A stretch of DNA of 64,000 nucleotides from Octopus sinensis (GCF_006345805.1 NC_043004.1:46996001-47060000); one strand, 5' to 3'; positions 6,759 to 58,017 are shown, counted from the first letter of the stretch. The notes: generated by a model from the sequence alone, not told the origin. Numbers and translations are program-made.

Positions 6759-6966
<208 letters not shown>

Positions 6967-8194
6967 GGATATTACACAAATGTCTTCATATATTTTACAG
7001 ACAAATAATCACGCACAAATTCATTCGCAACTATGCACAACTACAGACAGAAAGAAAAATAAACAGCTCGAACTAAACAAGAGTAATTGCCAGAAAAATC
7101 TTTGTTGTCATTTCATTATCGAAGAAAGAAGAATGAACATCAATAGCAAAAATAACTGTTATTAAAAGGATTTCATTTTTTCCTCCCTTTGTTAGATAGT
7201 GAAAGCTATATTTCAAAATGTCTATCTTATCATAATGCGTTTTGACAATTGATAGACTTATAACTTGAACCCAGGTTGAAAAGGTTGATAGGTAATATCA
7301 AAGAAAATTTAATGATGTGCAGTGAATATAAATGACCGGAAGAATATATTTTGAGGAAAATTTTGTATATGTTATTTTGTCTATTAATCACTGAATGTGG
7401 AATCTGACATAGTTGATAGTGTACCATATTAATGGTTTGGAACTCAGTGTTTCTAATTCTTTCATGGTAGAAAGTCTTTATATGACTACCATTCAGATAT
7501 AGGCAATTTCTAAATGTGTTGCTCTTGACTGTTTTCGTTGCCATTTGTTTGCTTTGTTTTGCTTTTGCATCGCTACAGATTAGGTTACAGTTTGCAAACC
7601 TATGATGAAAAAAACCTTTCAGTTTGGAGTCATGACTATAACTTGTATTGTTTAAGGAAACGCGTTACCGTAGCAACTTTTCCAGCATCTATGGTGTGAA
7701 ATTAAACAATAGCGGATCGTTTTTCTTATTTGTTCTAGAAAGAAAAGCAACAACGCACGAGTTTATTTCCATTAGTAAAGTTTGATGCACAATTCAATTT
7801 AGTAACAATATTACAAGCTGGTATTATATCAAAGAAATGCTTCAAATCGAAGCACTATTTCTCAAATCTGGGAGATTACGCCTCTGGCAAATCTGCATAT
7901 TGTCAGATTGCCTCAGAAAAGAATCATAGCTCAGATGTTTTAGAGGCAAGTCTAGCCAATAGGAAACGCAGGAGTGCACCACAAGTGAAACAGTTGACCG
8001 AAATCACCAGTCTCGATTGACCTCAATCGCTGGTGCGATCAGATATAAGCCTAACTGTTGCTTTCTATAACATACTCTACAAAACGTGACGTTGATTCAA
8101 CTCTTGCGTTTTCCATGTAAGTCATGTTTTTTCACAAGAGAGCGTAAAAGTATTTCGTGAAAAATCCTGATTTTGCCACAAAGGCGGCGATTTT

Positions 8195-10516: not shown

Positions 10517-12435
10517 AGAAATTAAGTATAAATGAGTCCAAGTTGCGATTTCATGTGTACTAATTCAGTATCATCATAAAGCTAACCCAGAATACTGAAT
10601 CGCTTGATGCCGCTTAACCACATTGGGACTAATTCAATTCAGAAAACGAATTTCTAAAATTTGTCATAATCAGCCTTATTCAGAGAAAGACAAGATCCCT
10701 TCAAATAGTAGATGCATTGTATCCAATGTAACATATCGTATGTTCTAATTTCTACTGAATTCAAAAATTGCTGTGGTCAAAATAATTATTCTTAGAATTG
10801 AATGTCCTATATCTTCGTATCATAAATAAAATGCCACAATTATTCTATCAAACTTAATGTAAGCAAAGTAATGCCGTAAAACTTTATAGAATGATTAATG
10901 AAACTGTTGTTTTTGAGCATACAGAAAATTATTTGGTAAGATGATATACAGTTAAAGATATATTCCATTAGAATAATTTATATGAGCTTATTTCTAAGAG
11001 TAGATATTTCAGTATGGTAACGTAGTAAAAATCTTTGCATATACTCATTATTTAGAAATTCTACTTCTAAAAGATCCTCAACGCCTCTTCATGAAGGAAA
11101 TTTCAGCTGACACAGTGAAATTGACCTCATTTCCACTTCAATATTAAATAGATTTCCACATCTAAATTTTGTTTGATCAATGAAATATCATTCAGCTCAA
11201 CGTCATCTCTAAACGATATATTCTCACGGAGAGAGTAATAAACATATGTACATACATGTATGTGATCATTCTAATGTCACTTCAAATACGTAATATGTTA
11301 GTTGGAATTTGTCTGAAGTGGTTGAGCCTCGCAAGTGAATCATTTCTGACAGTGAGTATAGATATATCTGAAATAAGGTTTACACATAAGAAAACTTAGA
11401 GTTATTCAGCTATCACATTTGTGAAGCAAACCTAGCGTAGCAAATTTAAGCGCATGGTTTCGTCAAATGCGTCATAATTTGTCAATTTCTTGACATCTCT
11501 TTAATATAGTTTCTGGAAATACGATCCACGGAAATGTAATTCAAATCTTTATTTCCTTAAATTGTCTTCCTTCCTTTTACAATACTGTCTTACTCTACGT
11601 CTAAAGACATTGTTGTTCCTCCTTCACGAATATATAATTTTTATCACTACAAAATATAAAATTCTTCTCTAATTCTTATTATTATCATTATTGTTGTTGC
11701 ATTTTATGTTATTGTTGTACTGGAAGCACGTGTGGCTTCTCGCTCGTAAGTTCAATTCTTTAATTTGTGTATTCAAAAGTTGTTAACTGTTTATTTAGTT
11801 AGGAAAACGTTTGTTATATACACCACAATTTCATAGTTTTGGTTTTCTGCTTGTATGTGCTTCTTTGGGATCATGAATTCGATTAGATAATGGTCATTTT
11901 GTTTACGGAAATATAACTTTATAAATAGAGATGGCGACGCCAGCTTTGGTATAAGAAATGAAAGAAGCAGTAAAAGGTAGGTTTGAAAGTGAAATGCAAG
12001 ACACCTCAGAGTCTTCCACATTCTACCCTCAAATGGAATAGGGAAGTAAGCTCTCATGAAGATCAAAATAAAGTGCGCCTCACCCCAGGATGAACATAAA
12101 GAACAGCAGCAACATCAACATCAACATCAACAACAACAGCAACAACAACAACAAACACACATACACACACAGCAAGGAAATTTTATAAATGTGACAATAC
12201 CAAAAACATCAACTCTTAGCGACAAAAATATCGACCAGAACTATAACAATAATAATGCATTCACAACTGCGGAAAAGTCACAGGGTTTTATATATATGTG
12301 TGTGTATGTGTGTGTGTGTGTGTGTGTTGTGTGTGTGTGTGTGTGCGTGCGTGTGTGTGTGTGTGTGTGTGTTTGTGTGGATAACCTACATGACGGCCAA
12401 AGAGTAAGGCCGAAATAAACACGGGTAGACATTAC

Positions 12436-12707: not shown

Positions 12708-13184
12708 CTGTGAAAATTAATCCACATTGAACTACACACAATCCATAATTTTGATTATATACACTAATTTTGTGGTGAGCCCCACTTCTTGCATGTGTTA
12801 TACTGTCTTTCTCTGTTTTCTGCCCGGCTCTTGTGGCCAATAAAGTGAACATTATTATGATTATTATTGTTATTATTATTACTATTATTATCAGACCATT
12901 CCAGTTCCATATATGATTTACCGTCCTACTCTTCAATTCATTGCCTCAATAGCATTTTTCGAATTCGACTGTGTAATATTTTCTCACACTCCTTGTATAC
13001 CCATTATACATAAATTAGTTGCAGTCTTCAATAATTACAGAAGCAAGATCAACCGAGAATAAAGTTAATGCATAGTCCCAACCTAGGCCATCAAAGTCAC
13101 TAATTGGTATATGTAGCATTTCTGTCGCAGTGACGTGAAGTGTCGATGACTTGGAAGACCAACCTAACGACCGGTGAAAAGATG

Positions 13185-13592
13185 GGATCCTTTCAGTTTG
13201 AACGGCAGTTTTTTAAAATAATTCCCACGTAACTAAACACTTTGAAATTCGTATACTGGTAGAATAAATTTATAAAACATCCTTTTCTCTTGGCTTTATT
13301 GAGAAAATTCTATAGTTTGTAAGATATTTGTTGTTTTTTTTTCTTCAATTTCTGCAATTTCAACCAATCAATGACGTTCTATTGAGGTGAAAACATTCTG
13401 TGCCGTATGAATATGTCCCTCGTTTAAGAAACATTTTTACATTTGTGAAGAAAAAAAGATACCCTTCCCCCACCCCAAACCCTAACCCTAAAACAGATTG
13501 AAATGCAATAGATCGATACTAGGGTCATAATTATGGGTGACAATTTCATATGACACCGCTAGAAAAAACTGCCATTCAAACCGAAAAGATCC
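13185..13592. mobile_element. MITE with GG-starting TIRs of about 29 bp and 8-bp TSD (Merlin- or hAT-like)
   Basis: TIR GGATC(C/T)TTTC(A/G)GTTTGAA(C/T)GGCAGTTTTT; perfect TSD AAAAGATG (13177-13184, 13593-13600); internal CCCTAA x2. Confidence 0.9.
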
Positions 13593-15964
13593 AAAAGATG
13601 TCCACAGAGCATGTGGAGACGAAATTTTCCGTTACACAAAGCCTTACCGCTATTTTCAGTCACTTACAACACAATACTCGTTGGTCAAAGATCCGTTGTA
13701 ATTGTTCGTTTCTTTAGAGAACTATTAACGAGAAAAGATGTTGTTTGGAGATGCTCGTAGAATATCATACACAATGTGCCGTAAGAAGGACATATGCGAA
13801 ATGAGCATTACACAACAAAAGTTTCTTTATGCATTCTAGCAGTGTCCAAATTGCCGACTACTGAATTTATCTGGACAGTTACTGAGACACTTGCTATTTG
13901 AGCTTATAAATATTATCCTACCACTATTTTGTTTTAGCATGAATAACATTCAGTTTTCCTTTGTGCTATATCTACGGCAAGCATTTTCGTTTGAGGGATG
14001 CAGAAGAGTGTGAGCTGAATTGAGAGACACCCTCCCGCTTGTTCCCGCAGTCATCAATTTTCTCCGAGTTTGAACTTGTAGAGGAAGATGATAGTGGAGT
14101 ATTAGTTTCTATCTTCTTGGATATGCGTTGAAAGATACATGATGGTAGGACAATTGGGCAGAGAAAACTAGCCTCCTCGAACAACAAATTGTATTTCTTT
14201 GAAGAAAGCAATGATATTTACAGAACTATGATGGTATATAGGCTCACTGAAATGTGCACCACAAGCATTTGTACTTTACATAAGGAAAGTCACAGATTAA
14301 TACAAGCTGCTTGATGTATGTTGCATTCATGTGAAGTAAATATTGATATCACTGAATACACGTGTGAAATAAAGAGTTGAATGTTGACCGGATTGGATAC
14401 ATGTGATTTTGCTAAATATTTTAGTTCAAACAATCACAGCGCTTGGAAATTGAGGCCAACGACCAAAAATTTATTGCTATGTAAAGCCATAACTTCCAAG
14501 AAACTTTAAAATGAAAGTGACACAATAGTAAAATAGCTAACAGAGTATGCTGTCCATTTGACGCAAGACAAGGTCGACTTATGAACCTTTTATGCTTAGC
14601 TAAAAGGATTTACATTTTCTCAGTCAGATGAACTAGAAAATAATGTGTCTAGCTACTCTTTTCATAACGTTCAATAATATTTTAAACTTTTAGTCATTTT
14701 CTAGCCATTTCTTATCACGCAGTTTCACACACATTTGCTATGGTAACATTGTTATAAAAGATATTGTTCCAGTTGACGTGTGGCTTCAGGTATGTCGTTC
14801 AATAGATATAGATTAAATAAAAATTATTCTCCTAACAGTAAGCGAATCAGACTGTCGATTTAAACTGCATTATATTCTACTCTAGAATAAATAAAACTGA
14901 CAGTATTTGGCAAATAAGAAAATTGAAACAGGATATTAAAACTTGTCCAAATAAAACATCTACGTCTCAAAAACATAATGTAAAGATTAACGATGTAATA
15001 ATTCGTACATAAAATATAAAAAAAGAAAAGAAATTGGGGCTCGTGTTATGTATACAATATGTTATTTTTAAAACATTTTTTAAAATGTACATATGAGACA
15101 AGTAATTGAGTTTCAGGAAACTGAGAAGTTAAGCAAGTCTAGAAAAAGGAATTAAATTAACGTTAGAAAATGTTTGAATAATCATATATAACTTGCCCAG
15201 AGCATTCTAACGTGAATGTGAATTCTTGGGAAAACAGTCAAATTACTAAACGCGTGTGATTCAACACCGAGAGATGTTGTTGAATTGAATAAAAATTATA
15301 TATTGTATATATCAAAGATTGCGAGAATCGGTAAGTTGTTTAACTGAATACAATACCGAACAGAAGAGAGAGTATTTCTTTGGAAATTTTAACAATAATA
15401 TCTCAATACGGTTGCGTGAGTGTAAAGCAATGATAAAAAGAATCATTTAAGAAATTAAAAAAAATTACCTACTGGAATTCTAGATGTACAGAAATTTCTA
15501 TACAAACATTCTTGACAAAAAAAATGGCAGCGAAGCGGAGTAAATGGTTTTATTATTGAATCTAGTTTATTTAAGCTTTGCGTTGACCTATACCTATAGT
15601 GCAGTTTACTTTTGATAACATATCCTTACATAGACGCAGGCCAGAAATTTGTGGGTAGGGTAAGTTGAATATTCAGATCTTCATTCTTGACTGTTACTAA
15701 ATTTTGTCGACTTTGAAAAGATGAAAGGTAAATTGGAAGTCAGAACACAGTAAGAACACTATTCTATTTTCTTTCTATGTTGAACGAGATTGTGTAAGAA
15801 AAGGTGGTATGTTTCAATCATTTTGGTTGCGCGTTCGAAGTTATTGCGAAAACTTATCCGAGTGAGTGCGTTTGAGTTTATTTCTGTGATGATGTTCGTG
15901 ATTAATATTGGTTTCAAATTTTGGTACAAGGCCAACAATTTCGTGGAAATGTGTTCGTCGTCCC

Positions 15965-17707: not shown

Positions 17708-17788
17708 ATCGATACTAGGGTCACAATTATGGGTGACAACTTAATACGACACCGCTAGAAAAAACTGCCGTTCAAACCGAAAGGATAC
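17708..17788. mobile_element. Terminal fragment of the GG-TIR MITE family
   Basis: Matches 13,510-13,592 (ATCGATACTAGGGTCA...AAAAACTGCCGTTCAAACCGAAAGGAT). Confidence 0.85.
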
Positions 17789-18093
17789 TAATCTCATGAA
17801 ATTAACATCAGATTTTTGTTTTTTTAATTTTGTTGGTAGCTGTTTAGCCATTATAGACAGGCTTAACCCAGGTTCAGTTAATTTTTGTTTGGCTACTCAC
17901 CGTTCAACGTACTCAAAAACTAGCACTGTAGTGAAAACACGTGATATCTTATACGGACGTCTTTGGCTTAGTTATATTACAAATGATAGTAGATAATCAT
18001 ACAATACTTTTTCATTAGACAAGAGATATTCAATAATAATTCTCAAGATTTATGTATTTTTGCTAAAAATGATATTTATGTATTAAGGATTTG

Positions 18094-18541
18094 AGATTTT
18101 TCGGATTGAACGGCAATTTTTTCTAGCGGTGTCATATGAAATTGTCACCCATAATTATGACCCTAGTATCGATCTATTGCATTTCAATCTGTTTCAGGGT
18201 TAGGGTTAGTTATGGTTAGGGTTAGAGTTAGTGTTAGGGGTGGGGAGAAGGGTATCTTTTTTTTCTTCACAAATGTAAATTAACCCAATCTGTTTCTTAA
18301 ACGAGGAGCATATTCATACGACACAAAATGTTTTTTTTATTCAATGGACGTCTTCGAGTGGTTGAAATTGCAGAAATTGAAAAAAAGAAAAACAGCAAAT
18401 ATCTTACAAACTATAGAATTTTCTCAATAAAGCCAAGAGAAAAAGATGTTTTATAAACACATTCTACCAGTATACGAAGTATAACATTTTTTAGTTATCT
18501 AGAAATTATGTTAAAAACTGCCGTTCAAACCGAAAAGATCC
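18094..18541. mobile_element. GG-TIR MITE copy, inverted relative to 13,185
   Basis: Both TIRs present (the left is degenerate); internal TTAGGG-like array at about 18,196-18,240; TSD not recognisable. Confidence 0.9.
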
Positions 18542-19508
18542 AATGTTTGTTCCAAATTTCAGTCATTGTTTTCTTGTGTCCTCGTCTAATCAAGTTAATT
18601 CACTCAGAAAACCGTAAATATTACTTTAACAGTTGAATATCGGTATTCAACTGCTGCCTGCCATCTTGAAGGACTTGAAATCTTGCGTCAAGTAAAGATG
18701 ATGATTGGCAGTTCGACATACTGAGTGACGTTGAGCAGAGATACGGGAAGACTATATATTTTATTCCTCAAGATATTTGGTCTACGATTACCTGGGATAG
18801 CTTCCAGAAATTTTCAACTTGGCAACGCTACAGAGAAAGCATACGATATTAATTCTACAGTGTGGTCTGATTGATCTGCGTGGAATGTATCCAAAATGCC
18901 AAAACTCTGCAGCAGGCATGCATTCGGTATTGGAGCGTTTCTGACTTGTGCAGGTATGTTGAACAGCTAATTGTGAGTGTGGACGTACTTAACTATCGGC
19001 AATATCCATTGTATCATAGCACGTCTCTTCTTTAACCGCACAGAGATATATGTTTTCCTCCAAAACCTTAACCCTAAATCGAACACCTTTATCTTCGTTG
19101 AAGCCCTTACCAATTGTTTTTCTTTAAGTTACATATGAAGAGATATTGAGTGTAATGAGAAAATTGCTCTTTTTGTAATGAAAAGATTGCGAACCGTAAT
19201 ACAAAATGCTGGAATGACTAGAAGTCCTTGAAGTATGTACAAGGGAGTGCAGTAGATTGAAGAAGATATTCGCAGCATATATTCAGAGTGAATTTGGATT
19301 TGTGTCGTTCTCGATAGAGTTAAGCTGGTGATTCGATTCGAGATCTATACCCTTCTCTTTCAAGATTTATGTATTTGTATAACATGTGTAGTTTATAATT
19401 CATTCGTGTTCTCCTCATTTGTTAATTTGTTATTCGGCCCATGTATTATATTTTGATAATACATGATATTAACCCTGAAGCTCCGATAATCAATGACACA
19501 GTTGTTTA

Positions 19509-19770
<262 letters not shown>

Positions 19771-27057: not shown

Positions 27058-27148
<91 letters not shown>

Positions 27149-27299
27149 CATTTTCTTTTATCTGTCCACTCGTATATGTTTGTGTGTGTGTATGGTTGTG
27201 TTTGAGTCCCTGTAGAACTTGTAGATTCCGAAGTATGTGAATCAAACAATTTTGTTTCTCATTCCGACATATACTTTTGACAGACTTTGTACTTTGCGT

Positions 27300-28005: not shown

Positions 28006-28679
28006 ATTAAATTTATTTGACAACATAACGTTGCAGTCCTAGTTAAGACGAATATTACTTCTGTTCCTATCTGTGTCCCTATATGTTTGAACAAGGGAGT
28101 TTAGCATCTCCACTCAGCTAAAGCAATATCTGTGTAACGCTATTCCTGGATTATTTCCCTTCATCAGCAAAGTATAACTTTTCGGCTAAAAGTGGCGCTG
28201 CCAAATTCTTGTTCGAAATATATAGTTTTTAAAGTCATACACTGTCACTCATCTAATAAAATTGAAAAGTACTATTTGTAAATTTCTCAACGAAAGAATT
28301 CATTAACAGTATTCTAGAGTAAAGATAATTTGTCAAGCAGGGCTGTCACGTTATGTTGGCAAATATTATTTAGTCTAGAGTGCTGTTACTGAATGTCTCT
28401 AGTTGAGAGATTTAGAAATAGTAATGTAATATATATATAGAAATAGTAATAGTAATATAAATGTATATATATGCATGTATATATATATATATATATAGAG
28501 AGAGATAAGAAAGTTTGTTTGGTAAAGCACGTGGGTGAATATATAAGAAAATAGTAAAGTGTGAAAAAACGACAGAAGGCTTAAATGTTAAAAAATATAT
28601 ATATTTGTGTCAAAATGTCTGGAGAATATTGGAAAAATTTTTTTCCTTTCCTTAAAATGACATAATTTTAAAATTTTTA

Positions 28680-28719
28680 AAGAAATTACCGGTTTCGCGT
28701 GTATCTTTTCAAATTTCTT
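28680..28719 (-). ncRNA. Minimal type-I hammerhead ribozyme fold (left-arm copy, 1-bp stem II)
   Basis: Mirror of 32,029-32,068, with C replaced by A in stem II (28,704). Confidence 0.55.
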
Positions 28720-28869
28720 GTGACGTTATGTTTATATTGCATGGAATTATCGTTGTTTTTATTTCCAGGAGATTTCTAAATAAGGGGAGGTAGTGAGTGA
28801 TTTTTTCCGGTGTAGGGGAGATAATCGCTTAAAAATTTTTTTTTTTTTTTTTTTTTTCCCATTTCCTTG

Positions 28870-30273
28870 TTAATTTCTCTGTGTCAGTATGTTCGGATGG
28901 TTGAGTCTGGGTTTGTACTTTTCAATGAAGAATGTTTCCTTGTTCAGTCTCATTTGTGTTGATGATCCGAAAGCACATTGGTAAAATGGGAAGATTAAAA
29001 ATTGTGGCATTAGTTGCTTTGCGCATTTCTCAATGTGCTCACTAAAAGGTATCATTCTATATTCTGGGAATGCAATCTGTTGTCGATGCAGTGTGCATCT
29101 GCGCCTGAGTGATAGTCCCGTGGAACCCACGTAGTCTTGGTGGCAGCCCGAGCATTTAATAACATAAATTATGTTTTCAGAGGCACAAGTAAAGTTAGAT
29201 TTGATCTTAAATTTCTGTCCCTCTTTAAAGAAGAATTCTGATCCTTCCAATAGGTTAGGACATGTTGCACAGTTCGATCTACCACATTTTTTTACTTTTG
29301 CATCCGTAATTTTAGAAGACAATTTTGCCTTTGTGAGAATCTTTTTAAGTGATTTAGGCTGTTTGTAGCTTTTAATGATTTGGTGTATGTTTAGAATTTC
29401 CTTTAATTTTGGGTTTTTATGAAGTATTGGTAAATTCTGGGTGATGATGGTGAAGGCTTCTTTGTTTCTGGGGTTGTATGTAGATATGTAAGGTAGTATT
29501 TTCGGGGAAGGTGTGTTGTTGTGTTGAACTTTTCTTAAAGTTTCTATGTTGATTTCTGTTGCACGTCTGATCCCATCCTCTATGAGTTGAGCTGGGTAAT
29601 GTCTGTCAATTAGGGTGTTTTTGAGTTCTTGCAGTCTAAAGTTCCTGGTATTTTGTTCTGACACTATTGTGCATATCCTTCTTGCAAGGTTGAAGGGGAT
29701 GTTTGTTTTAGTGTGTCTTGGGTGGCATGAATTAAAAAGAAGGTATTGTTTGGCGTCTGTGGCTTTGTAAAAAATGTCTGTTTCTATTTTAAGGTTAATT
29801 TTTTTAATTAGTATATCCAAGAACGGGAGCTCCTTTTGGTTGTATTCCATTGTGAACTGTATATTTGGGTTTATGCTATTCAATAGGTTTTTAAATTTTA
29901 GGAGTTTATCTATGTTTTCATTCCAGAGAATGAAACAATCGTCTAGGAATCGTTTCCAATTCTCTTTTATGTATTGAGAGAGGGAGTTTCCAAAGATTGA
30001 TAGAGATTCCTGGTAAATGATTATTTCCATGTATCCCATTGTTAAGTTCGCAATGACTGGTGCTGCCCTTGTACCCATAGCAATTCCGGATTTTTGACGG
30101 TAAAATGTATTGTCAAACATGAAGTGGTTATTGTGTAGGATGAATTCAATTGATTTAGTAATGAATTCCTTACTGATCCTTTTTGGTATTTCTTCCGGAA
30201 ATTGGTCTAACCAGAATTGTATTGCCTCCAGTCCATAATTATGAGGTATACTGGTATACAAGTTGACTACATC
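28870..30273 (-). CDS. Penelope-like RT + GIY-YIG endonuclease, N-terminally truncated but uninterrupted
   Basis: RT motifs DVVNLYTSIP, GIAMGTRAAPVIANL, RFLDD and LPFLDIL; thumb YLLFNSCHP; zinc-knuckle CGRSNCATC; GIY-YIG NIIYVIKCSGCHQDYVGST. The C-x4-C-x2-C knuckle suggests the Neptune group (inference). Confidence 0.9.
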   Translation of the reverse strand, partial: DVVNLYTSIPHNYGLEAIQFWLDQFPEEIPKRISKEFITKSIEFILHNNHFMFDNTFYRQKSGIAMGTRAAPVIANLTMGYMEIIIYQESLSIFGNSLSQYIKENWKRFLDDCFILWNENIDKLLKFKNLLNSINPNIQFTMEYNQKELPFLDILIKKINLKIETDIFYKATDAKQYLLFNSCHPRHTKTNIPFNLARRICTIVSEQNTRNFRLQELKNTLIDRHYPAQLIEDGIRRATEINIETLRKVQHNNTPSPKILPYISTYNPRNKEAFTIITQNLPILHKNPKLKEILNIHQIIKSYKQPKSLKKILTKAKLSSKITDAKVKKCGRSNCATCPNLLEGSEFFFKEGQKFKIKSNFTCASENIIYVIKCSGCHQDYVGSTGLSLRRRCTLHRQQIAFPEYRMIPFSEHIEKCAKQLMPQFLIFPFYQCAFGSSTQMRLNKETFFIEKYKPRLNHPNILTQRN

Positions 30274-30300
30274 CCATTGTAGCTGGCCCAACCTGGCCCA

Positions 30301-32203
30301 ACTACGACCCATTGTAGCTGGCCCAACCTGTGAAACACACAGACTAAGTCTACTTATGGACATCCTCTTGAAACCCTTCCTTAAACATATCGATAGCCAT
30401 ATCAGAGATGACTTAGATATGTTAAACCACCTTCCAAAAAAAACCAAGGAAGAAACAATCCTGGTTTCATTTGATGTAGTCAACTTGTATACCAGTATAC
30501 CTCATAATTATGGACTGGAGGCAATACAATTCTGGTTAGACCAATTTCCGGAAGAAATACCAAAAAGGATCAGTAAGGAATTCATTACTAAATCAATTGA
30601 ATTCATCCTACACAATAACCACTTCATGTTTGACAATACATTTTACCGTCAAAAATCCGGAATTGCTATGGGTACAAGGGCAGCACCAGTCATTGCAAAC
30701 TTAACAATGGGATACATGGAAATAATCATTTACCAGGAATCTCTATCAATCTTTGGAAACTCCCTCTCTCAATACATAAAAGAGAATTGGAAACGATTCC
30801 TAGACGATTGTTTCATTCTCTGGAATGAAAACATAGATAAACTCCTAAAATTTAAAAACCTATTGAATAGCATAAACCCAAATATACAGTTCACAATGGA
30901 ATACAACCAAAAGGAGCTCCCGTTCTTGGATATACTAATTAAAAAAATTAACCTTAAAATAGAAACAGACATTTTTTACAAAGCCACAGACGCCAAACAA
31001 TACCTTCTTTTTAATTCATGCCACCCAAGACACACTAAAACAAACATCCCCTTCAACCTTGCAAGAAGGATATGCACAATAGTGTCAGAACAAAATACCA
31101 GGAACTTTAGACTGCAAGAACTCAAAAACACCCTAATTGACAGACATTACCCAGCTCAACTCATAGAGGATGGGATCAGACGTGTGCAACAGAAATCAAC
31201 ATAGAAACTTTAAGAAAAGTTCAACACAACAACACACCTTCCCCGAAAATACTACCTTACATATCTACATACAACCCCAGAAACAAAGAAGCCTTCACCA
31301 TCATCACCCAGAATTTACCAATACTTCATAAAAACCCAAAATTAAAGGAAATTCTAAACATACACCAAATCATTAAAAGCTACAAACAGCCTAAATCACT
31401 TAAAAAGATTCTCACAAAGGCAAAATTGTCTTCTAAAATTACGGATGCAAAAGTAAAAAAATGTGGTAGATCGAACTGTGCAACATGTCCTAACCTATTG
31501 GAAGGATCAGAATTCTTCTTTAAAGAGGGACAGAAATTTAAGATCAAATCTAACTTTACTTGTGCCTCTGAAAACATAATTTATGTTATTAAATGCTCGG
31601 GCTGCCACCAAGACTACGTGGGTTCCACGGGACTATCACTCAGGCGCAGATGCACACTGCATCGACAACAGATTGCATTCCCAGAATATAGAATGATACC
31701 TTTTAGTGAGCACATTGAGAAATGCGCAAAGCAACTAATGCCACAATTTTTAATCTTCCCATTTTACCAATGTGCTTTCGGATCATCAACACAAATGAGA
31801 CTGAACAAGGAAACATTCTTCATTGAAAAGTACAAACCCAGACTCAACCATCCGAACATACTGACACAGAGAAATTAACAAGGAAATGGGAAAAAAAAAA
31901 AAAAAAAAAAAATTTTTAAGCGATTATCTCCCCTACACCGGAAAAAATCACTCACTACCTCCCCTTATTTAGAAATCTCCTGGAAATAAAAACAACGATA
32001 ATTCCATGCAATATAAACATAACGTCACAAGAAATTTGAAAAGCTACACGCGAAACCGGTAATTTCTTTAAAAATTTTAAAATTATGTCATTTTAAGGAA
32101 AGGAAAAAAATTTTTCCAATATTCTCCAGACATTTTGACACAAATATATATATTTTTTAACATTTAAGCCTTCTGTCGTTTTTTCACACTTTACTATTTT
32201 CTT

Positions 32204-32209
<6 letters not shown>
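30301..32209 (+). mobile_element. Penelope-like element, right arm (longer 5' end, frameshifted)
   Basis: Begins at the RT motif LRPIVAG (about 30,301). A GT duplication at 31,182-31,185 splits the ORF into 30263-31204 and 31426-31878. The 3' end runs into (AT)n at 32,209. Confidence 0.95.
32029..32068 (+). ncRNA. Minimal type-I hammerhead ribozyme with U3-A8 covariant core
   Basis: Stem I AAGAAAT/ATTTCTT (7 bp perfect), core TTGAAAA, stem II GC-tacac-GC, GAA, palindromic stem III ACCGGT, cleavage triplet GUA (32,059-32,061). Lies about 150 nt after the ORF stop. Confidence 0.7.
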
Positions 32210-32241
<32 letters not shown>

Positions 32242-32278
32242 ACTCATGGGTTAGCCATATTCAAATGGCAAATATGTG

Positions 32279-32319
<41 letters not shown>

Positions 32320-32552
32320 TATATATATTATATATATATATATATAAATAAAAGGAATTCCAACCTTGTCTGATTTTCCCGTTTTATTTACAATCTTATA
32401 ATGATATATTATAAGATAATATAATATTATAGAATACAATAAAATAGTAGAATGTTAAATGTTCATTCTGATTGAACTAGTACTTTCATGCATTAAATTC
32501 TGCAATCTTCAGGTTCATGTAGTAGTGGTGTCAGTCATGCTTCACAATTTGA

Positions 32553-36889: not shown

Positions 36890-38287
36890 GTCATTTACTT
36901 TTAATCTGCATGTTTGATGCAATCACCTGCCGGGGCACACCCAGCGCCCTAGGGCAAGTGAAGGTTAAGAGTTGTTGAAATATAGCTGAAAGCTTGGGGA
37001 GGGGAAGTAGAGAAATATCTCCATGTAATACAAACACAAACATTTACATTGATAGGGTTTTTCTAAGGATGTGGGCAGTACTTGTTAGCACAATCTTTTG
37101 GATTTCCTTGAGACATGGTTTTCCACGGATATTGTCTAGGTGTTTCTGACATCCCTTTTTTATCATACCTAGGGCACCTACAATAACAGGAACAATTTTT
37201 GTTTTAAGATTCCACATCCTCTGTATTTCGATTTCCAGGTCCTTATATTTACTAAGTTTGTCAAATTCCTTGACAGATACATTTTTATCAGTGGGGACGC
37301 TTACTTCTATTAGTCTGCAGGTATTTTCTTCACTGTCTTTAACAATTATGTCTGGTCGATTAGCCTTGATCGTTCTGTCAGTGTTGACTGGAAAATCCCA
37401 GAGGATGGTGACATCTTTACCTTCAACAACTGGCTGAGGATGGTGTTCATACCAGTTAGCAGGAGTGTCGGATTTGTAGTGTTTACATATCTTCCAATGT
37501 ATATACTGTCCTACCCTATCGTGGCGATTTTTGTATTCGTTTGGTGTCAGCACAGGACATCCCGAAACGAGATGGTCTATTGTTTCGTCAAATGTGTCAC
37601 AGAATCTGCATTTAGGGCCAGTACCGTTTCGGAGAACGTTAGCCTGGTAATTTCTGGTAAACAAGCTTTGATCTTGTGCTGCCATTATGAAGCCTTCAGT
37701 CTCTGCTTTCAATCCAGAACTCTTCAGCCATTGATGGGTTGTTGCTTGGTCTACATCAGCATTTTGGCTTCGGAGAATGTATTGTCCATGCAGGGGCTTC
37801 TGGCTCCACCGCCTCTCAATTTGATTCTGCCCACTTTTTTTTTGCAGTCTGCCTGATTCGCTTTGCTTGCTTGGTAGCAGTGGTTTCTGGCTCTTCACCT
37901 GATTCAAGGTTAATGCCTAGTTCCCTTTCGAACTTATAAGCTTCCTTGACAATAGAATGCAGCTTTTTGTTGCTTTCGTGTTCACACACAAGTCGCAGCA
38001 TCCAGTCTTTTGTACTAGCTAGGTACCTGTTCATTCCTATAGTAGAGGTCTTATAGCACAGCTCCAATTGCATCATTCCTCTCCCCCCGCTGCTTCTAGG
38101 GTGGTGCATGCTCCTGGATGTCAGTAACTTTCTTGTCTTCCTGTCCAAGCGTTGGAGTTCCGTAAGGTTCCAGTTAATGATGTTAAAACTGTACTGGACT
38201 ACTGGAAGTGCCAGGGTGTTAATGGCCTCAATGCAATTTTTGGAGTTGAGTTCAGTCTTCAGTACAAGCCTTATTCTCCTATAGTAC
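36890..38287 (-). mobile_element. 5'-truncated R4/Dong-clade LINE (RT C-terminus, CCHC finger, REL endonuclease)
   Basis: ORFs 37816-38346 (YYRRIRLVLKTELNSKN...AINTLALPVVQY) and 37044-37907 (CRFCDTFDETIDHLVSGC, RHDRV, RPDIIV...LIEVSVP...KYKDL, VPVIVGALG). (TAA)n lies on both sides. Confidence 0.93.
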
Positions 38288-38309
38288 TTATTATTATTAT
38301 TATTATTAA

Positions 38310-38341
<32 letters not shown>

Positions 38342-38342
<1 letters not shown>

Positions 38343-38520
38343 CCACAGCTCATTTTGCTGGGTATGATGGAAAGTATCAGCTGTCCGCAGCGAGGAAACT
38401 AAGGTGACACTTGTTTACTGGTCATGCTTCAAGAAACCTGCGAAGAATTCTTGCGGGTCCAAACAATGCTGATTTTTGTAGGTGTTCTACCTTCACACTT
38501 GCACTGATCTTTTTCAGCCA
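38342..38520 (-). mobile_element. Very short 3' end of a second R4/Dong-like family
   Basis: The minus strand reads ...VEHLQKSALFGPARILRRFLEA* plus a different 3' UTR, between two (TAA)n tracts. Confidence 0.75.
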
Positions 38521-39559: not shown

Positions 39560-40600
39560 GAATGTGACCAAATTAGTTATGTTTTTCAATATAGCACCTC
39601 TTGCGGTCCACTCTTTTCTTCTAGTGCTTGGATCCCATTAATGAAGAAACTTTCATCCTCTTGTTCAAAATCGCCAGCAACAGCTGATATGACATCATTA
39701 TCATTGCGATACTGGTTTATAGGTAAGGGTTTATTTATGTTGGGGAACTTATGGTAGTCTGATAGGCCCAAATCAAAGAAAACTAGGTTCGTGTGATTGA
39801 CCTGTTCAAAGCCACATGTGTGTACTGGAAGATTTTCGTGATGAAAAAATAAATTATTCGTCATTTTTGTAACTGTCTTAGTTAGTCGGCATAGTATTCT
39901 ATTAATGGTGTGCATCTTCTGAAGATAGTCAATAAATAAAATGTCTTTTTCATTCCACAACAGTGAATCCATCAACTTATCTGCAGATGAAACGACCTCG
40001 GCCTCGTTTGGAACAGGTGAGGACGGGTGTTTACAATGCATGGATAGTCGATTTGGTTCTGGTTCAAAGTGCTGAACCTATCACTCATCATAGCTTTGGA
40101 ACCATTCAAGGAAACAGGCTCGATCTGCTTCAAACAACGTCAAATTTTCCTCTGATCTGATCAGCCTGGTATGCATTTGAGCAGGTCTCACAAGACGCGA
40201 CAGCCCCGGAGGAGTAACCTTTGGCATTCCAAATGTGTTGATCACAGTATTTCCATGTCTCCCACAGTATATGATAACAACATTAGCTATTTGATGTATA
40301 GTGAATCGCCTCTCATGCATCAATACGTGATGAACACAATATTTTCATCAGTAGTGAAACTACACAACTTGGGTCATCCTCATCATTCTCTCTTCTCGTT
40401 CCCAATTCAGCTGCGCACTTTTGCTTTGTTGATAAAACTGGGGTGTCATCCTTTAATGTAGCAACCAATGAAAAGTGAATGTCCTGGGGGTCTAAACTGT
40501 TTTTCTGGTAACTAATTACGCCACGATTCCAAATATTGTCCACTTTCAAAAGAAAATGATACTCTTTAATTTTGAATTCTTTCAAGAGTCAGATATTTAT
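39560..40600 (-). mobile_element. Degraded mariner
   Basis: Fragments 40313-40585, 40081-40323 (RRFTIHQIAN) and 39586-40041 (ILFIDYLQK...FFHHEN...FEQEDESFFINGIQAL). Confidence 0.85.
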
Positions 40601-48982: not shown

Positions 48983-49408
48983 ATTCAATTCAATTTTTAT
49001 TGGCTCAAAAAGCAAAAGCAAGGCCATGTAGGGGGACAGGGAGTCATGTATAGGGAGGGTGATCATACAAAGTGTTCAGGCCAATCCTGGTCAAGAGAGA
49101 CTTTGAACCGAGCGGTCGTCGCCATCTCCAATATCTCGCCCGGCAGCTTATTCCACGGATCCGCAACCCGGACGGAGAAAGCCCCTCTTCTTCGACTGAG
49201 ATGAAATCATCGTAGATAGAGCTTTTCGGAGTGACCCCGCAGCCCACGCTCTCGAGCAGGAGTGAAGAACAGCTCTTTCGAGAGGTTACACTTTCCGCTT
49301 TGATGTGAGCGAGAATGAGATCACCACGGCGTCGTCGTTTTTCAAGTGAATAAAGGTCGAGCGGCTTCAGCCTTTTCTCATAAGACAAATGCTTAAGACC
49401 AAAATGCG
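48983..49408 (-). mobile_element. CR1-type LINE 3' fragment with (ATTGA)n tail
   Basis: GLKHLSYEKRLKPLDLYSLEKRRRRGDLI; same family as 49,891-50,424 in the opposite orientation. Confidence 0.9.
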
Positions 49409-49727
49409 ATATATTTTCATTACAGTACATCACATTATATTTTAGTATTGGTTGCGTTTGCATTTGACTTCCGACTATAGTTAATTGGTTATCCCAAATA
49501 TAGATACGATGTACTTACTTCTGGAATGTGCACTCTTTGACAATTTACATTAAATACCTCTATATATCTCCTCATCTGTTGCTGGAATCATTTCAACAAT
49601 AATGACTATAATCAATATGTGTGGCACATCTACATCGCCTGAGTGTTAGTTGCTACAGGAACTAACTAGAGCAATGACTCATATGAAATGGTTCCGAAGA
49701 GATCATTGTATTGAGAGAAGAAAATTC

Positions 49728-50689
49728 GGATCTTTTCGGTTTGAACGGCAGTTTCTCTAGAGGTGTCATATGAAATTGTCACCTATAATTATGACTCTAG
49801 AATCGATCTGTTGCATTTCAATCTCTTTTAGGATTAGGGTTAGGGTTAGGGTTAGGGTTGGGCTAGGGTTAGAAGTGGGTGAAGGGTATCGAGACCCATA
49901 TTGGAGTATGGGATTCAAGCCTCTTCTCCTTATCTCCTCAAAGACATACAGCACCTCGAAAGAGTCCAGAGGCTGGCTACCCGCATGGTTCATGGTCTCA
50001 AAAATTTGTCCTACGAAGAAAGGCTGAGGACGCTCAACCTTTGTTCTCTTGAAAAACGCCGTCGCCGTGGTGATCTCATTCTCTCCCACAACATCATAAG
50101 CGGGAAGTGTAACCTCTCGAAAGAGCTGTTCTTCACTCCTGCTCCGGAGCGTCGGCTGCGGGGTCATTCCGAAAAGCTCTACCTGCGACGATTTCATCTC
50201 AATCGAAGGAGAGGAGCTTTCTCCGTCCGGGTTGCGGATCCGTGGAACAAGCTGCCAGACGAGATGGTGAAGATGCCGACGACCGCTTTGTTCAAAGCCT
50301 CCCTGGACCTCAAGTGGCCTGAACTCTTTACATGAACACCACCCTGTACTTAACTCCATGTCCCCCTACATGGCCTTGCTATTTGCTTTTGAGCCAAATT
50401 AACTAACTAACTAACTAACTAACTAAATGTAAATAAACCTAAACTGTTTCTTAAACGAGGGACATATTCATACGGCACAGAATGTTTTTTAACTCAATAG
50501 ACGTCACTAATTGGTTGAAATTGCAGAAATTGAAGAAAAAAACAAATATCTTACAAACTATAGAATTTTCTCAATAAAGCCAAGAGAAAAAGATGTTTTA
50601 TAAACACATTCTACCAGTATACGAAGTTAAAATTTTTTTTAATTACCTAGAAATTATGTTAAAAACTGTCGTTCAAACCGAAGAGATCC
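49728..50689. mobile_element. GG-TIR MITE interrupted by a LINE
   Basis: Both TIRs present; perfect 8-bp TSD GAAAATTC (49720-49727, 50690-50697); (TTAGGG)4 at 49,834-49,857. Confidence 0.92.
49891..50424 (+). mobile_element. 5'-truncated CR1-type LINE with (AACT)6 tail, nested in the MITE
   Basis: RPILEYGIQASSPYL...LERVQRLATRMV...SYEERLRTLNL.SLEKRRRRGDLI...FSVRVADPWNKLP; frame intact to the stop at 50,335. Confidence 0.93.
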
Positions 50690-51684: not shown

Positions 51685-52560
51685 CATACATAAGTGTGTG
51701 TTGGTATGTGTACATACCAATTATGGAAATATTCAGTAATACAAAAGTAGGACCCCTCCTACCTCACCAAACATTCAAAATTAATCACACGTTGGTATGT
51801 TAGCCCAATGTTAAATTGAGTATTATTTCTTATGCATTGTAGCATTGGGAAAGAAAACTTGAAATTATGGTTTAATTTGTAGTTTTATGACTTGTTATAT
51901 TCATTAATATTTCGTCCAGAAATGTTTATGTTTAATGCAGAAAGACACGAATTGCTTTGGTATATTTGGTTTTTATTTGTGTATTTTATTTATTTATCTA
52001 TTGATGTTAATTTTCGAGTAAAATATGGAGAAAAAATGTCCGCAACAGGTATTCATTAAAAAATAAAAGTTATTTGGAAATAACTCTCCGGGTGAGAAGC
52101 CAATGTTAATAACGTTCGTAAGTAAACTTTTGGTGTTATTACATGTCTAGAATACGTGACTACATACGCATAAGTTTATAATTGCGTATAGTTCAACGAT
52201 GAAAGACATGTTATATTGTTGCAGGGTAAATAATTCATACGTTTAGTAAGCACATGGCTATATATTTAACTCAGCATACTTTCGTAGTTTCACCATTCTT
52301 ACTAGAGCATTTTGTAGGAGATATTCTATACCTGTTAATTTCTAAAGTAATATTAGTATGATATACATACAATAATATAAACACTGCTTGTACACTGTTA
52401 GAGGTGATGTAGGATAGCATAGATAAATAATAGTGAAGTTGCAATAATATACCCTAAACAGATTAATTTTACCTGCCGGCGGTGCTTCACAGTATACATG
52501 CAGGGATCTGGGTTTAATTGTACGTATCGCCCCTTACTGTTGGCAAAGAAGGCTTGTCGA

Positions 52561-52880
52561 CCAGATTGACATAAACATTGGTTGGGGGTTTCACGTACCG
52601 AGTGAGATTCAGAGCATCAGTCAAGTGCGTTAATGGTTGTTCGAAAATTAATTAGTTCATGAGATCTTGCTTAATTGAAGCGTGCGGTAAATGTAGCAAT
52701 TCCTGTCATTTGTGCGACTACCAGTTTGACTTAAACATTGGTTGGGAGTTTCACGTACCGAGTGAGATTCAGAGCATCAGTCAAATGCGTTAATGGTTGT
52801 TCGAAAATGAACTAGTTCATGAGATCTTGCTTAATTGAAGCGTGGGGTAAATGTAGCAATTCCTGTCATTTGTGCGACTA
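52561..52880. repeat. Two-copy 160-bp direct tandem duplication
   Basis: 52,561-52,720 versus 52,721-52,880; 7 mismatches in 160 counted by eye. Confidence 0.97.
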
Positions 52881-53084
52881 CATGACTACAACGAATGTCA
52901 AGAGATGCTGCATAATTATATCAAATCATTCGCGATAGTGAGATGGAAAGAGAGAGAGAAAGAGAAAGAGGAGAGAGAGATGTATGTGCGTGTGGGCGTA
53001 CGGACGTCTACAAAATAAAATGCACACTAGCGCCAAATTACAACCTAAAATGCAACACAAACGTCCTAATTGTACACTCTGCAT

Positions 53085-54942: not shown

Positions 54943-54964
54943 TGCACAATTATATGAAAATATT

Positions 54965-55001
<37 letters not shown>

Positions 55002-57826: not shown

Positions 57827-57881
<55 letters not shown>

Positions 57882-57953
57882 TAAATTAGAGATAAAACCA
57901 CTATTAGGCAAATCAAACAGTGAAAATCATAAGCCAATACATAGAAATATATA

Positions 57954-58017
<64 letters not shown>

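What the first reader, a model, noticed from the sequence alone, without database searches (positions are those of the whole stretch)
28539..32209. Very young Penelope-like retroelement forming a 3.7-kb head-to-head palindrome
Seen: the left arm 28,539-30,273 (1,735 bp) is the reverse complement of the right arm 30,473-32,209 (1,737 bp) around a 199-bp spacer. By eye there are only three differences (30,049/30,697 silent; GT indel at 31,182-31,185; 28,704/32,044), and even the A22 run is equal. Both outer junctions are element 3' ends near (TA)n, with no TSD. Established: Penelope-like elements often carry inverted or tandem partial repeats, usually of the terminal repeat; here most of RT, the endonuclease and the 3' region are mirrored. 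Inference: either both ends of a break were primed on element RNA and the two truncated cDNAs were joined, or one cDNA folded back. A read-through transcript would form about 1.7 kb of dsRNA, a potential endo-siRNA/ADAR substrate and self-silencing locus.
Basis: partly seen in the sequence, partly recalled or inferred. Interest (0 to 1): 0.82.

Follow-up and report, generated by a model that had tools for sequence, protein, structure and literature searches.

The report
Head-to-head Penelope-like retrotransposon insertion
The 3.7-kb palindrome is real and consists of two 5'-truncated copies of a Neptune-type Penelope-like retrotransposon joined head-to-head inside a (TA)n microsatellite, which is the textbook insertion signature of this transposon class rather than something new.

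Summary
Arms 28539-30273 and 30473-32209 are reverse complements, with 2 substitutions and one 2-bp (GT) insertion between them.

The element is a canonical endonuclease-bearing Penelope-like element (PLE) of Neptune type. It has an RT, a CX4CxxC linker, a GIY-YIG/CCHH endonuclease and a minimal U3-A8 hammerhead motif in the 3' UTR. Its closest relatives come from bivalves.

- The 199-bp "spacer" is not a spacer. 30300-30472 is extra 5' RT coding sequence of the right copy. 30274-30299 is a 26-nt filler re-copied from 30309-30330 and joined at short microhomologies.
- The left copy continues 41 nt beyond the palindrome (28498-28538). This stretch is AC-rich and is collinear with the 3' end of a related element. 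It matches the one-sided 30-40-bp "tail" typical of PLEs.

Each arm therefore carries element sequence that the other lacks. This favours two separate reverse-transcription products primed on both strands of one (TA)n target, over a fold-back copy or a DNA-level duplication.

Head-to-head inverted 5'-truncated copies, one-sided tails, (TA)n targets and siRNA-producing long inverted Penelope repeats are all published. The verdict is a well-preserved, young, ordinary instance of a known kind, of low-to-moderate interest. An assembly artefact is unlikely but cannot be tested without reads.

The parts
28429..28497 (.). Left remnant of the (TA)n/AT-rich microsatellite target
   Evidence: Tandem repeat finder, period 2; sequence read directly.
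28498..28538 (-). 41-nt element-derived 'tail' of the left copy. In element sense it reads TCACCCACGTGCTTTACCAAACAAACTTTCTTATCTCTCTC. It is absent from the right copy.
   Evidence: It is collinear with the 3'-terminal stretch of related element L002 (about 3175-3211), which also directly precedes a (TA)n tract. For the tail alone, 31 of 2000 shuffles reach the observed alignment score. Its length and one-sidedness match the published PLE tail (PMC8557442; PMC3846280; PMC11167929).
28539..30273 (-). Left copy (palindrome arm), 5'-truncated inside the RT. The 3' UTR is 28539-28869. The stop codon is 28870-28872. The intact RT-linker-endonuclease frame of 467 codons runs up to 30273 (begins DVVNLYTSIPH).
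   Evidence: The frame is intact and collinear with P0001 (76% identity) and other relatives.
28680..28719 (-). Minimal hammerhead-like motif of the left copy. It carries the derived C>A change at 28704, which breaks one of the two helix II pairs.
30274..30299 (.). 26-nt junction filler CCATTGTAGCTGGCCCAACCTGGCCC. It is a 22-nt re-copy of 30309-30330 plus GCCC, and creates a CTGGCCCAAC x2 tandem. Together with the last 8 nt of the left arm it forms a 30-nt direct repeat: 30266-30295 versus 30301-30330, 93% identical.
   Evidence: Direct-repeat family D3; sequence. Homology to L002 and the conserved DLKLRPIV codons start at 30300.
30300..32209 (+). Right copy, 5'-truncated 173 nt further upstream than the left copy. 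The RT frame starts at (K)LRPIVAGPTCETHRL. A GT insertion within 31182-31186 shifts the frame. The stop codon is 31876-31878 and the 3' UTR is 31879-32209. It ends in TTATATAT directly against (TA)n, with no tail.
32029..32068 (+). Minimal type-I hammerhead-like motif (U3-A8 core variant): AAGAAAU-UUGAAAA-GCUACACGC-GAAA-CCGG-U-A|AUUUCUU.
   Evidence: Manual parse and comparison with eight related sites. The U3-A8 variant is published for PLEs (PMC4209133). Rfam models do not detect it.
32210..32241 (.). Right remnant of the (TA)n target
   Evidence: array 32203-32241, which overlaps the element's terminal TATATAT; sequence.

Best explanation
One retrotransposition event of a recently active Neptune-type Penelope-like element into a (TA)n microsatellite.

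Proposed sequence of events (inferred):
- The element's RT-endonuclease nicked both strands of the target.
- Each 3'-OH primed reverse transcription of element RNA from its 3' region.
- One cDNA, now the left copy, started at the distal RT start site and so carries the 41-nt tail. It stopped at the position equivalent to 30473.
- The other cDNA, now the right copy, started at the proximal start site in TTATATAT and so has no tail. It ran 173 nt further, to 30300.
- Both cDNAs are antisense and cannot simply anneal. Their 3' ends were joined by polymerase template switching at microhomologies: ACTACATC versus ACTACGAC (6 of 8), then CTG and AAC. This left a 26-nt templated filler.
- Each cDNA then served as the second-strand template for the other.

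The product is a 3.7-kb head-to-head palindrome with no recognisable target-site duplication.

What is shown: the anatomy, the PLE identity, the unique sequence in each arm, the templated junction and the (TA)n target. What is inferred: dual-strand priming, the order of template switches and the polymerase responsible. A transcript crossing the locus would form about 1.73 kb of dsRNA. Whether one is made is unknown.
For: Identity:
- RVT_1 scores 31.8 bits, above its cut-off. GIY-YIG is hit at E=0.0028.
- 831 homologues were found; the named ones are bivalve proteins or host contamination in symbiont bins.
- The invariant CX4CxxC, GIY...YIG, CCHH, R, H, E and N residues are present.
- A minimal hammerhead motif lies in the 3' UTR.

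Single event and shared template:
- Relative to the independent copy L001, the arms share 4 substitutions and the A22 expansion. They differ from each other at only 3 sites.
- No target DNA lies between the two 5' ends, only element-derived filler.

Two separate RT products:
- The right copy has 173 nt of native RT coding sequence that the left copy lacks.
- The left copy has a 41-nt tail that the right copy lacks. The tail is homologous to and collinear with the 3' end of L002.
- So neither arm can be a plain copy of the other.

Biochemical precedent:
- A purified Poseidon PLE protein cleaves and extends both strands of an AT-rich target.
- It uses two RT start sites whose spacing equals the tail (PMC11167929).

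Structural precedent:
- An adjacent inverted 5'-truncated copy, a tail at one end only and (TA)n targets are described for PLEs (PMC8557442).
- Head-to-head is reported as the most frequent inverted arrangement (PMC3846280).
Against: - The tail homology rests on one related element, at modest significance (31 of 2000 shuffles).
- The tail is flanked by TATATAT on one side and (TA)n on the other. Its absence from the right copy could therefore be a later slippage deletion. That would remove the main argument against a fold-back origin.
- No full-length copy of this family was found. The native sequence upstream of 30300, and hence the exact filler boundary, is inferred from a relative with 75% DNA identity.
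- The order and strand of the template switches cannot be determined from the product.
- The in-vitro precedent comes from a different PLE clade (Poseidon, a lizard element).
- No reads were available to exclude misassembly.
- In the few related loci examined, the copies were in tandem arrays and not inverted.
Confidence: 0.6

Rival explanations
1. A single cDNA folded back or self-primed. One target-primed cDNA (the right copy) switched template onto itself about 199 nt behind its 3' end and copied itself back to its own 5' end. The tail was later lost from the right end, or the 41 nt on the left is not element sequence.
For: Arkhipova et al. infer self-priming in PLEs from palindromes at inverted junctions (PMC3846280). 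A 5-bp palindrome CTACA/TGTAG lies at the junction. The tail is bracketed by TA repeats that could mediate its deletion.
Against: The 3' end of the right cDNA (...CTACAATGG) has no complementarity to the site where copying would have to start, next to GTTGACTACATC (sequence). A self-copy cannot contain a tail that its template lacks, so an extra deletion must be assumed. The 6-of-8 microhomology at the junction fits annealing of a second cDNA end, which a snap-back would not give.
Confidence: 0.15
2. Two independent insertions of the same family, in opposite orientation, into the same (TA)n tract.
For: PLE endonucleases prefer AT-rich DNA and their own neighbourhood (PMC11167929). The window holds many (TA)n tracts. 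The family appears recently active, because an independent near-identical copy, L001, exists.
Against: No (TA)n or other target DNA remains between the two 5' ends. The junction is made only of element-derived templated filler. The arms are each other's closest relatives: they share 4 substitutions and A22 relative to L001. The second 5' end would have had to land exactly on the first.
Confidence: 0.07
3. A DNA-level inverted duplication of a single pre-existing truncated copy, after insertion. Possible routes are replication template switching (FoSTeS/MMBIR) or hairpin-capped break repair.
For: Microhomology and short templated insertions at the junction are also hallmarks of replicative or polymerase-theta-type repair (general knowledge, not tested here). 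TATATAT at the arm end could serve as microhomology with the flanking (TA)n.
Against: Each arm has element sequence that the other lacks: 173 nt at the 5' end of the right copy and 41 nt at the 3' end of the left copy. The duplication is confined to the element and no unique flank is mirrored. Break-induced fold-back would normally copy outward past the element.
Confidence: 0.06
4. An assembly or library artefact, such as a fold-back chimeric read, an amplification chimera or a mis-join.
For: The arms are near-perfect, including an identical 22-nt homopolymer. PLE tandem/inverted structures are known to trouble assemblies (PMC8557442). No read data were available.
Against: The palindrome is internal, with more than 28 kb of unrelated sequence on each side. 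It is bounded by element ends and (TA)n, not by read or contig ends. It is asymmetric, through the tail, the extra 5' sequence and the filler. The arms differ by a non-homopolymer 2-bp indel and two substitutions, one of them at a CpG. Its geometry is exactly the one documented for real PLE insertions.
Confidence: 0.06

Closest known systems
Canonical endonuclease-containing Penelope-like elements of the Neptune type (RT + CX2-5CxxC linker + GIY-YIG/CCHH endonuclease), with their typical complex insertions
   Same: The domain order and motifs match. Full-length relatives carry the GxKF and DKG N-terminal motifs. There is a minimal hammerhead motif in the 3' region. The target is (TA)n with no discernible target-site duplication. 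The copies are 5'-truncated. An inverted 5'-truncated copy abuts the 5' end head-to-head. A tail of about 40 nt is present at one end only. Relatives form tandem arrays (PMC8557442, PMC3846280).
   Different: Both copies here are truncated inside the RT. There is therefore no full-length unit, no pseudo-LTR and no tandem partner. The inverted arms are 1.7 kb of RT, endonuclease and UTR, not a pseudo-LTR of a few hundred bp. Clade placement rests on motifs, not on a phylogeny.
Poseidon PLE of Anolis carolinensis (PAc), in-vitro target-primed reverse transcription (Frangieh et al. 2024, PMC11167929)
   Same: It shows an AT-rich cleavage preference. Both DNA strands are cleaved and extended. There are two internal RT start sites whose spacing equals the genomic tail, in an AC-rich region. 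The window's tail is likewise AC-rich and about 40 nt long.
   Different: It belongs to a different clade (Penelope/Poseidon lacks the CX2-5CxxC linker) and a different host. The in-vitro system did not reconstitute the joining of two cDNAs. No stable stem-loop is predicted in the window's 3' terminus.
LINE-1 twin priming inversions
   Same: The second strand of the target also primes reverse transcription. The two cDNAs are resolved through microhomology, which gives an inverted segment inside one insertion.
   Different: In twin priming the inverted and direct segments come from adjacent, essentially non-overlapping parts of one RNA, and the second primer anneals internally. Here both arms cover the same 3' 1.7 kb and both start at the element's 3' region. 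There is also no poly(A) end and no target-site duplication.
Rearranged Penelope copies with long inverted repeats that yield siRNAs in transformed Drosophila melanogaster (PMC3681739). Also inverted Pen3 halves with polarity-switching small RNAs in Adineta vaga (PMC3846280).
   Same: These are long inverted repeats within the Penelope body, formed during transposition and able to give dsRNA.
   Different: Small RNAs were measured there. Nothing about transcription or small RNAs can be tested for this window.

Membership tests
Penelope-like elements, canonical C-terminal EN+ (Neptune type) | Reverse transcriptase domain related to those of other PLEs | tested here: met
   RVT_1 scores 31.8 bits, above the 29.6 cut-off. 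There are 831 homologues at E<=1e-5, sharing RPIVAGP, FDVxxLY(T/S)xIP, AMGT and (F/Y)LDDCF. Placement of the RT within the PLE clade by phylogeny was not done.
Penelope-like elements, canonical C-terminal EN+ (Neptune type) | C-terminal GIY-YIG endonuclease with an internal CCHH motif | tested here: met
   PF01541 is hit at E=0.0028 (18.3 bits, below the 22.6 cut-off) in the window protein. Relative P0007 scores 26 bits, above the cut-off. Invariant Y426, C430, C433, Y437, G439, R448, H452, H469, C473, E502 and N514 are seen across 10 relatives.
Penelope-like elements, canonical C-terminal EN+ (Neptune type) | CX2-5CxxC zinc-finger-like linker between RT and endonuclease (present in Neptune/Nematis, absent in Penelope/Poseidon) | tested here: met
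   The motif KKCGRSNCATCP is present, and C386, C391 and C394 are invariant. The criterion comes from PMC8557442.
Penelope-like elements, canonical C-terminal EN+ (Neptune type) | N-terminal GxKF/Y and DKG motifs | tested here: inconclusive
   Both window copies are 5'-truncated downstream of these motifs. Full-length relatives (P0003, P0004, P0007, P0012, P0070) carry KG(L/F)KFTP and EADKG.
Penelope-like elements, canonical C-terminal EN+ (Neptune type) | Pseudo-LTRs arising from partial tandem insertion | tested here: inconclusive
   There is no direct repeat of element sequence at this locus, which is expected when both copies are truncated within the RT. Related families sit in head-to-tail arrays: L003 has three units of about 3.87 kb and L004 has two units.
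Penelope-like elements, canonical C-terminal EN+ (Neptune type) | Hammerhead ribozyme motif in the terminal (pseudo-LTR / 3') region | tested here: met
   A minimal type-I motif lies at 32029-32068 and 28680-28719. It has a 7-bp helix I, a UUGAAAA core (U3-A8), a 2-bp helix II, GAAA, palindromic CCGG, then U and H17=A. The GAAACCGGUH half is conserved in seven related families. Helix I and positions 3/8 covary across them. The U3-A8 PLE variant is published. Rfam models find nothing. Catalysis was not tested.
Penelope-like elements, canonical C-terminal EN+ (Neptune type) | [quoted passage not shown] | tested here: met
   A 41-nt tail sits on the left copy only (28498-28538). It is collinear with the L002 3' terminus. 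A shuffle test gives 31 of 2000. Support comes from a single relative.
Penelope-like elements, canonical C-terminal EN+ (Neptune type) | Adjacent inverted 5'-truncated copy (head-to-head) and an AT-rich/(TA)n target without a clear target-site duplication | tested here: met
.
LINE-1-type twin-priming inversion | Inverted and direct segments derive from adjacent, non-overlapping parts of one RNA, with a poly(A) 3' end and a target-site duplication | tested here: not met
   The arms cover the same 1735 nt of the element. There is no terminal poly(A), only an internal A22, and no target-site duplication. The criteria are from general knowledge.
Hairpin-RNA / endogenous siRNA locus | Transcription through both arms and 21-23-nt small RNAs mapping to them | not testable with these tools
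   Only the potential is shown. The predicted fold has 1733 arm-to-arm pairs and an MFE of -3158 kcal/mol.
Fold-back assembly or amplification artefact | The mirror symmetry continues into unique flanking sequence or ends at read/contig ends, and the arms and junction lack biological landmarks | tested here: not met
   The symmetry stops at the element ends and the flanks are unrelated apart from (TA)n. The tail, the extra 5' sequence and the filler are all asymmetric.

The most novel reading that the evidence does not exclude
The locus is an unusually clean single-event record of PLE integration in vivo. One target was primed on both strands. The two strands used the two alternative RT start sites, so only one arm carries the tail. 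The two antisense cDNAs were stitched together by serial microhomology template switches, which left a templated filler. If a genome-wide census of this young family showed the same rules, it would carry the in-vitro dual-strand cleavage and extension model into animals. It would also explain mechanistically the 'complex inverted' PLE insertions. As a bonus, the locus could be an active hairpin-RNA source against its own family.
Probability: 0.45. Interest if true: 0.4.

Novelty: new member of a known kind. Interest (0 to 1): 0.25.

Why it matters
The main value is for annotation and method.
- Near-perfect kilobase palindromes in invertebrate assemblies can be genuine PLE insertion products. 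They should not automatically be treated as artefacts or as novel structures.
- This young, well-preserved copy keeps all the junction details that usually decay: the tail on one arm, different 5' truncation points and a templated filler.
- Its family would therefore be a good substrate for a genome-wide test of the dual-strand priming model proposed from in-vitro work.
- If transcribed, the locus would be a 1.7-kb hairpin-RNA source against a recently active element. That effect has precedent for Penelope in Drosophila.

Tried and rejected
- Rfam scans for hammerheads found nothing in the window at gathering threshold, in 27.5-33 kb at E<=5, or in six related loci at E<=1. The motif was found only by manual parsing.
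- A strict CTGANGA...CGAAA pattern gave one chance-level hit elsewhere, at 23728.
- Searches for further copies of this family failed. A protein-guided scan and an exact 3'-end pattern in metagenome contigs found nothing, and neither did the same pattern in prokaryotic genome contigs. The only near-identical sequence is a 1.2-kb Logan contig, L001, which stops short of both the 3' end and the junction. The native sequence upstream of 30300 and the tail therefore rest on L002, a relative with 75% DNA identity.
- The sample accession of L001 appears in no paper, so the host species was not identified beyond 'probably a bivalve or other mollusc'.
- Folding the 3'-terminal 103 nt gave no stable stem-loop at the presumed RT start region. 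Folding the junction DNA was not significant either (z = -1.2).
- The few related loci inspected showed tandem arrangements, not inverted ones. The frequency of the inverted geometry in this clade was therefore not measured.
- Snap-back priming of the right cDNA at the observed junction was rejected, because the required complementarity is absent.
- L1-like twin priming was rejected because the arms overlap completely.
- A foldback DNA transposon was rejected because the arms encode RT and endonuclease and there is no transposase.


Full report
OBSERVATION

The repeat finder and a gapped alignment both recover the palindrome exactly as described. Arm 28539-30273 (1735 nt) is the reverse complement of arm 30473-32209 (1737 nt), with 199 nt between them. 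There are only three differences:
- 28704/32044.
- 30049/30697, which is GCG versus GCA, both Ala.
- A GT insertion within GTGTG at 31182-31186 of the right arm.

Both arms carry an identical 22-nt A-run. Self-comparison of the whole window finds no other copy of the element. Apart from (TA)n tracts, it finds no mirrored sequence outside the arms. (TA)n arrays lie directly outside both ends.

WHAT THE SEQUENCE IS

The minus strand of the left arm carries an uninterrupted frame of 467 codons ending at stop 28870-28872. The right arm carries the same frame, broken by the 2-bp insertion.

Domain evidence:
- The N-terminal two thirds hit RVT_1 above Pfam's cut-off.
- The C-terminal 150 residues hit GIY-YIG at E=0.0028.

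A database search gave 831 homologues. The closest are P0001 (76% identity) and P0002 (99% over the C-terminal 326 aa, from a Logan assembly). Every named hit is either a bivalve protein (Pinctada, Crassostrea, Saccostrea) or a 'GIY-YIG nuclease' in gill-symbiont bins, which is host contamination.

An alignment with nine relatives shows the following features:
- Invariant RT motifs.
- A CX4CxxC linker.
- GIY...YIG with internal CCHH, plus the catalytic R, H, E and N.
- In the full-length relatives, the N-terminal GxKF and DKG motifs.

By the published criteria (PMC8557442) this is a canonical C-terminal EN+ Penelope-like element of Neptune type. The assignment rests on motifs, not on a phylogeny. 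Related families sit in head-to-tail tandem arrays (L003, L004), which is another PLE hallmark.

HAMMERHEAD MOTIF

Rfam detects no hammerhead. The 3' UTR nevertheless contains GAAA-CCGG-U-A at 32052. This half-motif is conserved in all seven related families examined, and the residue after the U is A, U or C, never G.

Parsing around it gives a minimal type-I hammerhead at 32029-32068:
- Helix I, AAGAAAU/AUUUCUU, 7 bp.
- Core UUGAAAA.
- A 2-bp helix II.
- GAAA, then a palindromic CCGG in place of helix III.

Across families, helix I differs in sequence but stays complementary. A control gives P(>=6 contiguous pairs) of about 0.009. Core positions 3 and 8 covary:
- C-G in L002, L004 and L005.
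- A-U in L003, L009 and L011.
- U-A in the window.

The U3-A8 variant of PLE minimal hammerheads is already published (PMC4209133; PMC3088659). The arm difference at 28704/32044 lies in helix II, and the left-arm allele is the derived one.

CORRECTED ANATOMY: THE CENTRE

The 199-bp 'spacer' is not a spacer. From 30300 rightwards it is the RT frame, (K)LRPIVAGPTCETHRLS...FDVVNLY, continuous with the right arm. It is collinear with P0001 and L002, both as protein (DLKLRPIVAGP) and as DNA, with blastn homology starting at 30300.

The right copy is therefore 30300-32209. It is truncated 173 nt further upstream than the left copy.

The remaining 26 nt (30274-30299, CCATTGTAGCTGGCCCAACCTGGCCC) is a re-copy of 30309-30330 plus GCCC. 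Together with the last 8 nt of the left arm it forms a 30-nt direct repeat with 30301-30330, at 93% identity (family D3). The end of the left arm (ACTACATC) resembles the native ACTACGAC at 30301-30308 in 6 of 8 positions. The further joints share CTG and AAC.

The junction thus consists only of element sequence, re-copied from a 31-nt stretch and joined at microhomologies of 1-8 nt.

CORRECTED ANATOMY: THE LEFT END

Between the left (TA)n and the arm lie 41 nt (28498-28538). In element sense they read TCACCCACGTGCTTTACCAAACAAACTTTCTTATCTCTCTC.

This stretch continues the alignment of the 3' UTR with related element L002. There, the homologous AC-rich stretch (…ACCACGTGTGTACTCAAACCACAACTTTCCTCCCC) also runs directly into a (TA)n tract.

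Taken alone, the 41 nt reach their alignment score in 31 of 2000 shuffles. The collinearity adds weight, but support comes from one relative only.

The right copy lacks this stretch. It ends in the element's TTATATAT directly against (TA)n. [quoted passage not shown]

MECHANISM

Each arm holds element sequence that the other lacks: 173 nt at the 5' end of the right copy and 41 nt at the 3' end of the left copy. Neither arm can therefore be a plain DNA copy of the other.

The arms are nevertheless each other's closest relatives. Against the independent copy L001 they share four substitutions and the A8-to-A22 expansion. No target DNA separates their 5' ends.

The most economical reading is one event in which both strands of a (TA)n target primed reverse transcription of the same RNA population:
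- One priming started at the distal start site, giving the tail.
- The other started at the proximal start site, giving no tail.
- The two antisense cDNAs were then joined by template switching at microhomologies.

This matches the only biochemical study of a PLE. The purified Anolis Poseidon protein cleaves and extends both strands of an AT-rich target. It initiates at two internal sites whose spacing corresponds to the genomic tail (PMC11167929).

What is inferred, not shown: the dual priming itself, the order of switches, and whether the element's RT or a host repair polymerase made the filler. I give this explanation a confidence of 0.6.

RIVALS

- Fold-back of a single cDNA (0.15). This is favoured in part of the literature for palindromic junctions. 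Here the required complementarity at the restart site is absent. A later TA-mediated loss of the tail from the right end would also have to be assumed. That loss is possible, because the tail is bracketed by TA repeats.
- Two independent insertions (0.07). These would need the second 5' end to land exactly on the first, with no target DNA left between them.
- Post-insertional inverted duplication (0.06). This does not explain the arm-specific sequences or the confinement of the palindrome to the element.
- Assembly artefact (0.06). The palindrome is internal, asymmetric, bounded by element landmarks and not perfectly identical. This rival cannot be excluded without reads.

AGE AND dsRNA POTENTIAL

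Two substitutions in 1735 bp (0.12%), plus one indel and an identical A22, indicate a very recent origin. Alternatively they could reflect arm-to-arm gene conversion or consensus polishing. No calibrated date is possible.

An RNA spanning 28498-32209 is predicted to form 1733 arm-to-arm base pairs, with an MFE of -3158 kcal/mol. Transcription, small RNAs and editing cannot be assessed here.

For Penelope itself, long inverted repeats generated during transposition have been reported. [quoted passage not shown] Small-RNA polarity switches between inverted halves were also seen in a rotifer.

COMPARISON WITH WHAT IS KNOWN, AND VERDICT

Every feature of the locus is a documented property of EN+ PLE insertions:
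- A head-to-head inverted 5'-truncated copy.
- A one-sided tail.
- A (TA)n target without a target-site duplication.
- A minimal hammerhead.
- Microhomology at the 5' junction.

The particulars of this case are that both copies are truncated within the RT, so there is no pseudo-LTR and the arms are long. All junction details are also still legible because the insertion is young.

It is a new member of a known kind. It is useful as a clean example and as an entry point for a family-wide test of dual-strand priming, but it would not surprise a specialist. Interest: 0.25.

Noticed in passing
window 32029-32068 (+) and 28680-28719 (-); L002 ~3010-3050; L003 ~2615-2660; L004 ~10635-10680; L005 ~1500-1545; L009 ~2665-2710; L010 ~3605-3650; L011 ~2860-2900: A minimal hammerhead motif is shared by this mollusc PLE clade and is invisible to Rfam. 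Core positions 3/8 covary between families: C-G, A-U and U-A, plus one A/G case in L010. Helix I also covaries. U3-A8 is published for PLEs. I did not find the A3-U8 form (AUGAAUA, in L003/L009/L011) mentioned in the passages I read.
   Followed up: partly
window 27137-27150 (+) and 32277-32290 (-): TATATATAGTGACA occurs exactly twice in the window, in inverted orientation. It is part of a 52-nt, 98% complementary pair (27099-27150 / 32277-32328) that brackets the whole region including the palindrome. Only 7 nt are non-(TA)n, and 4 of 100 shuffles give two or more hits. It may be chance, or the ends of an older element inserted in (TA)n.
   Followed up: partly
L003 1-10479; L004 7969-15180: Related PLE families occur as head-to-tail tandem arrays: three units of about 3.87 kb at 98-99% identity in L003, and two units 4447 bp apart in L004. 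An upstream ORF (298-457 aa, no Pfam hit) slightly overlaps the start of the RT ORF. L004 also has 253-bp tandem repeats in its 3' region.
   Followed up: partly
database hits P0035, P0044, P0070, P0089, P0103, P0104: PLE RT-endonuclease proteins of clearly animal type are deposited as bacterial 'GIY-YIG nuclease family protein' of Solemya and lucinid gill symbionts (Candidatus Thiodiazotropha). This is most likely host-DNA contamination of symbiont bins.
   Followed up: no
window 37044-38346 (-) and 39586-40041 (-): Fragments of other mobile elements. One ORF has a weak zf-RVT hit, suggesting a non-LTR retrotransposon remnant. Another ORF has a partial mariner-type Transposase_1 hit.
   Followed up: no
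window 13178-13595, 17708-18548, 49724-50689; also 49000-49401 vs 49993-50397 (inverted, 85%): An interspersed repeat family of about 0.3-0.45 kb is present in at least three places in both orientations, at 82-92% identity. One pair forms a fold-back structure of about 1.4 kb near 49-50.4 kb.
   Followed up: no
window 6760-6971, 19508-19704, 52560-52881, 61065-61252, 54001-58000: Long microsatellites: (AGAT)53 and (ATC)66. A 160-bp unit is repeated twice at 95% identity, and a 101-bp unit occurs 1.9 times. A region of strongly negative GC skew (-0.49 and -0.30) lies at 54-58 kb.
   Followed up: no
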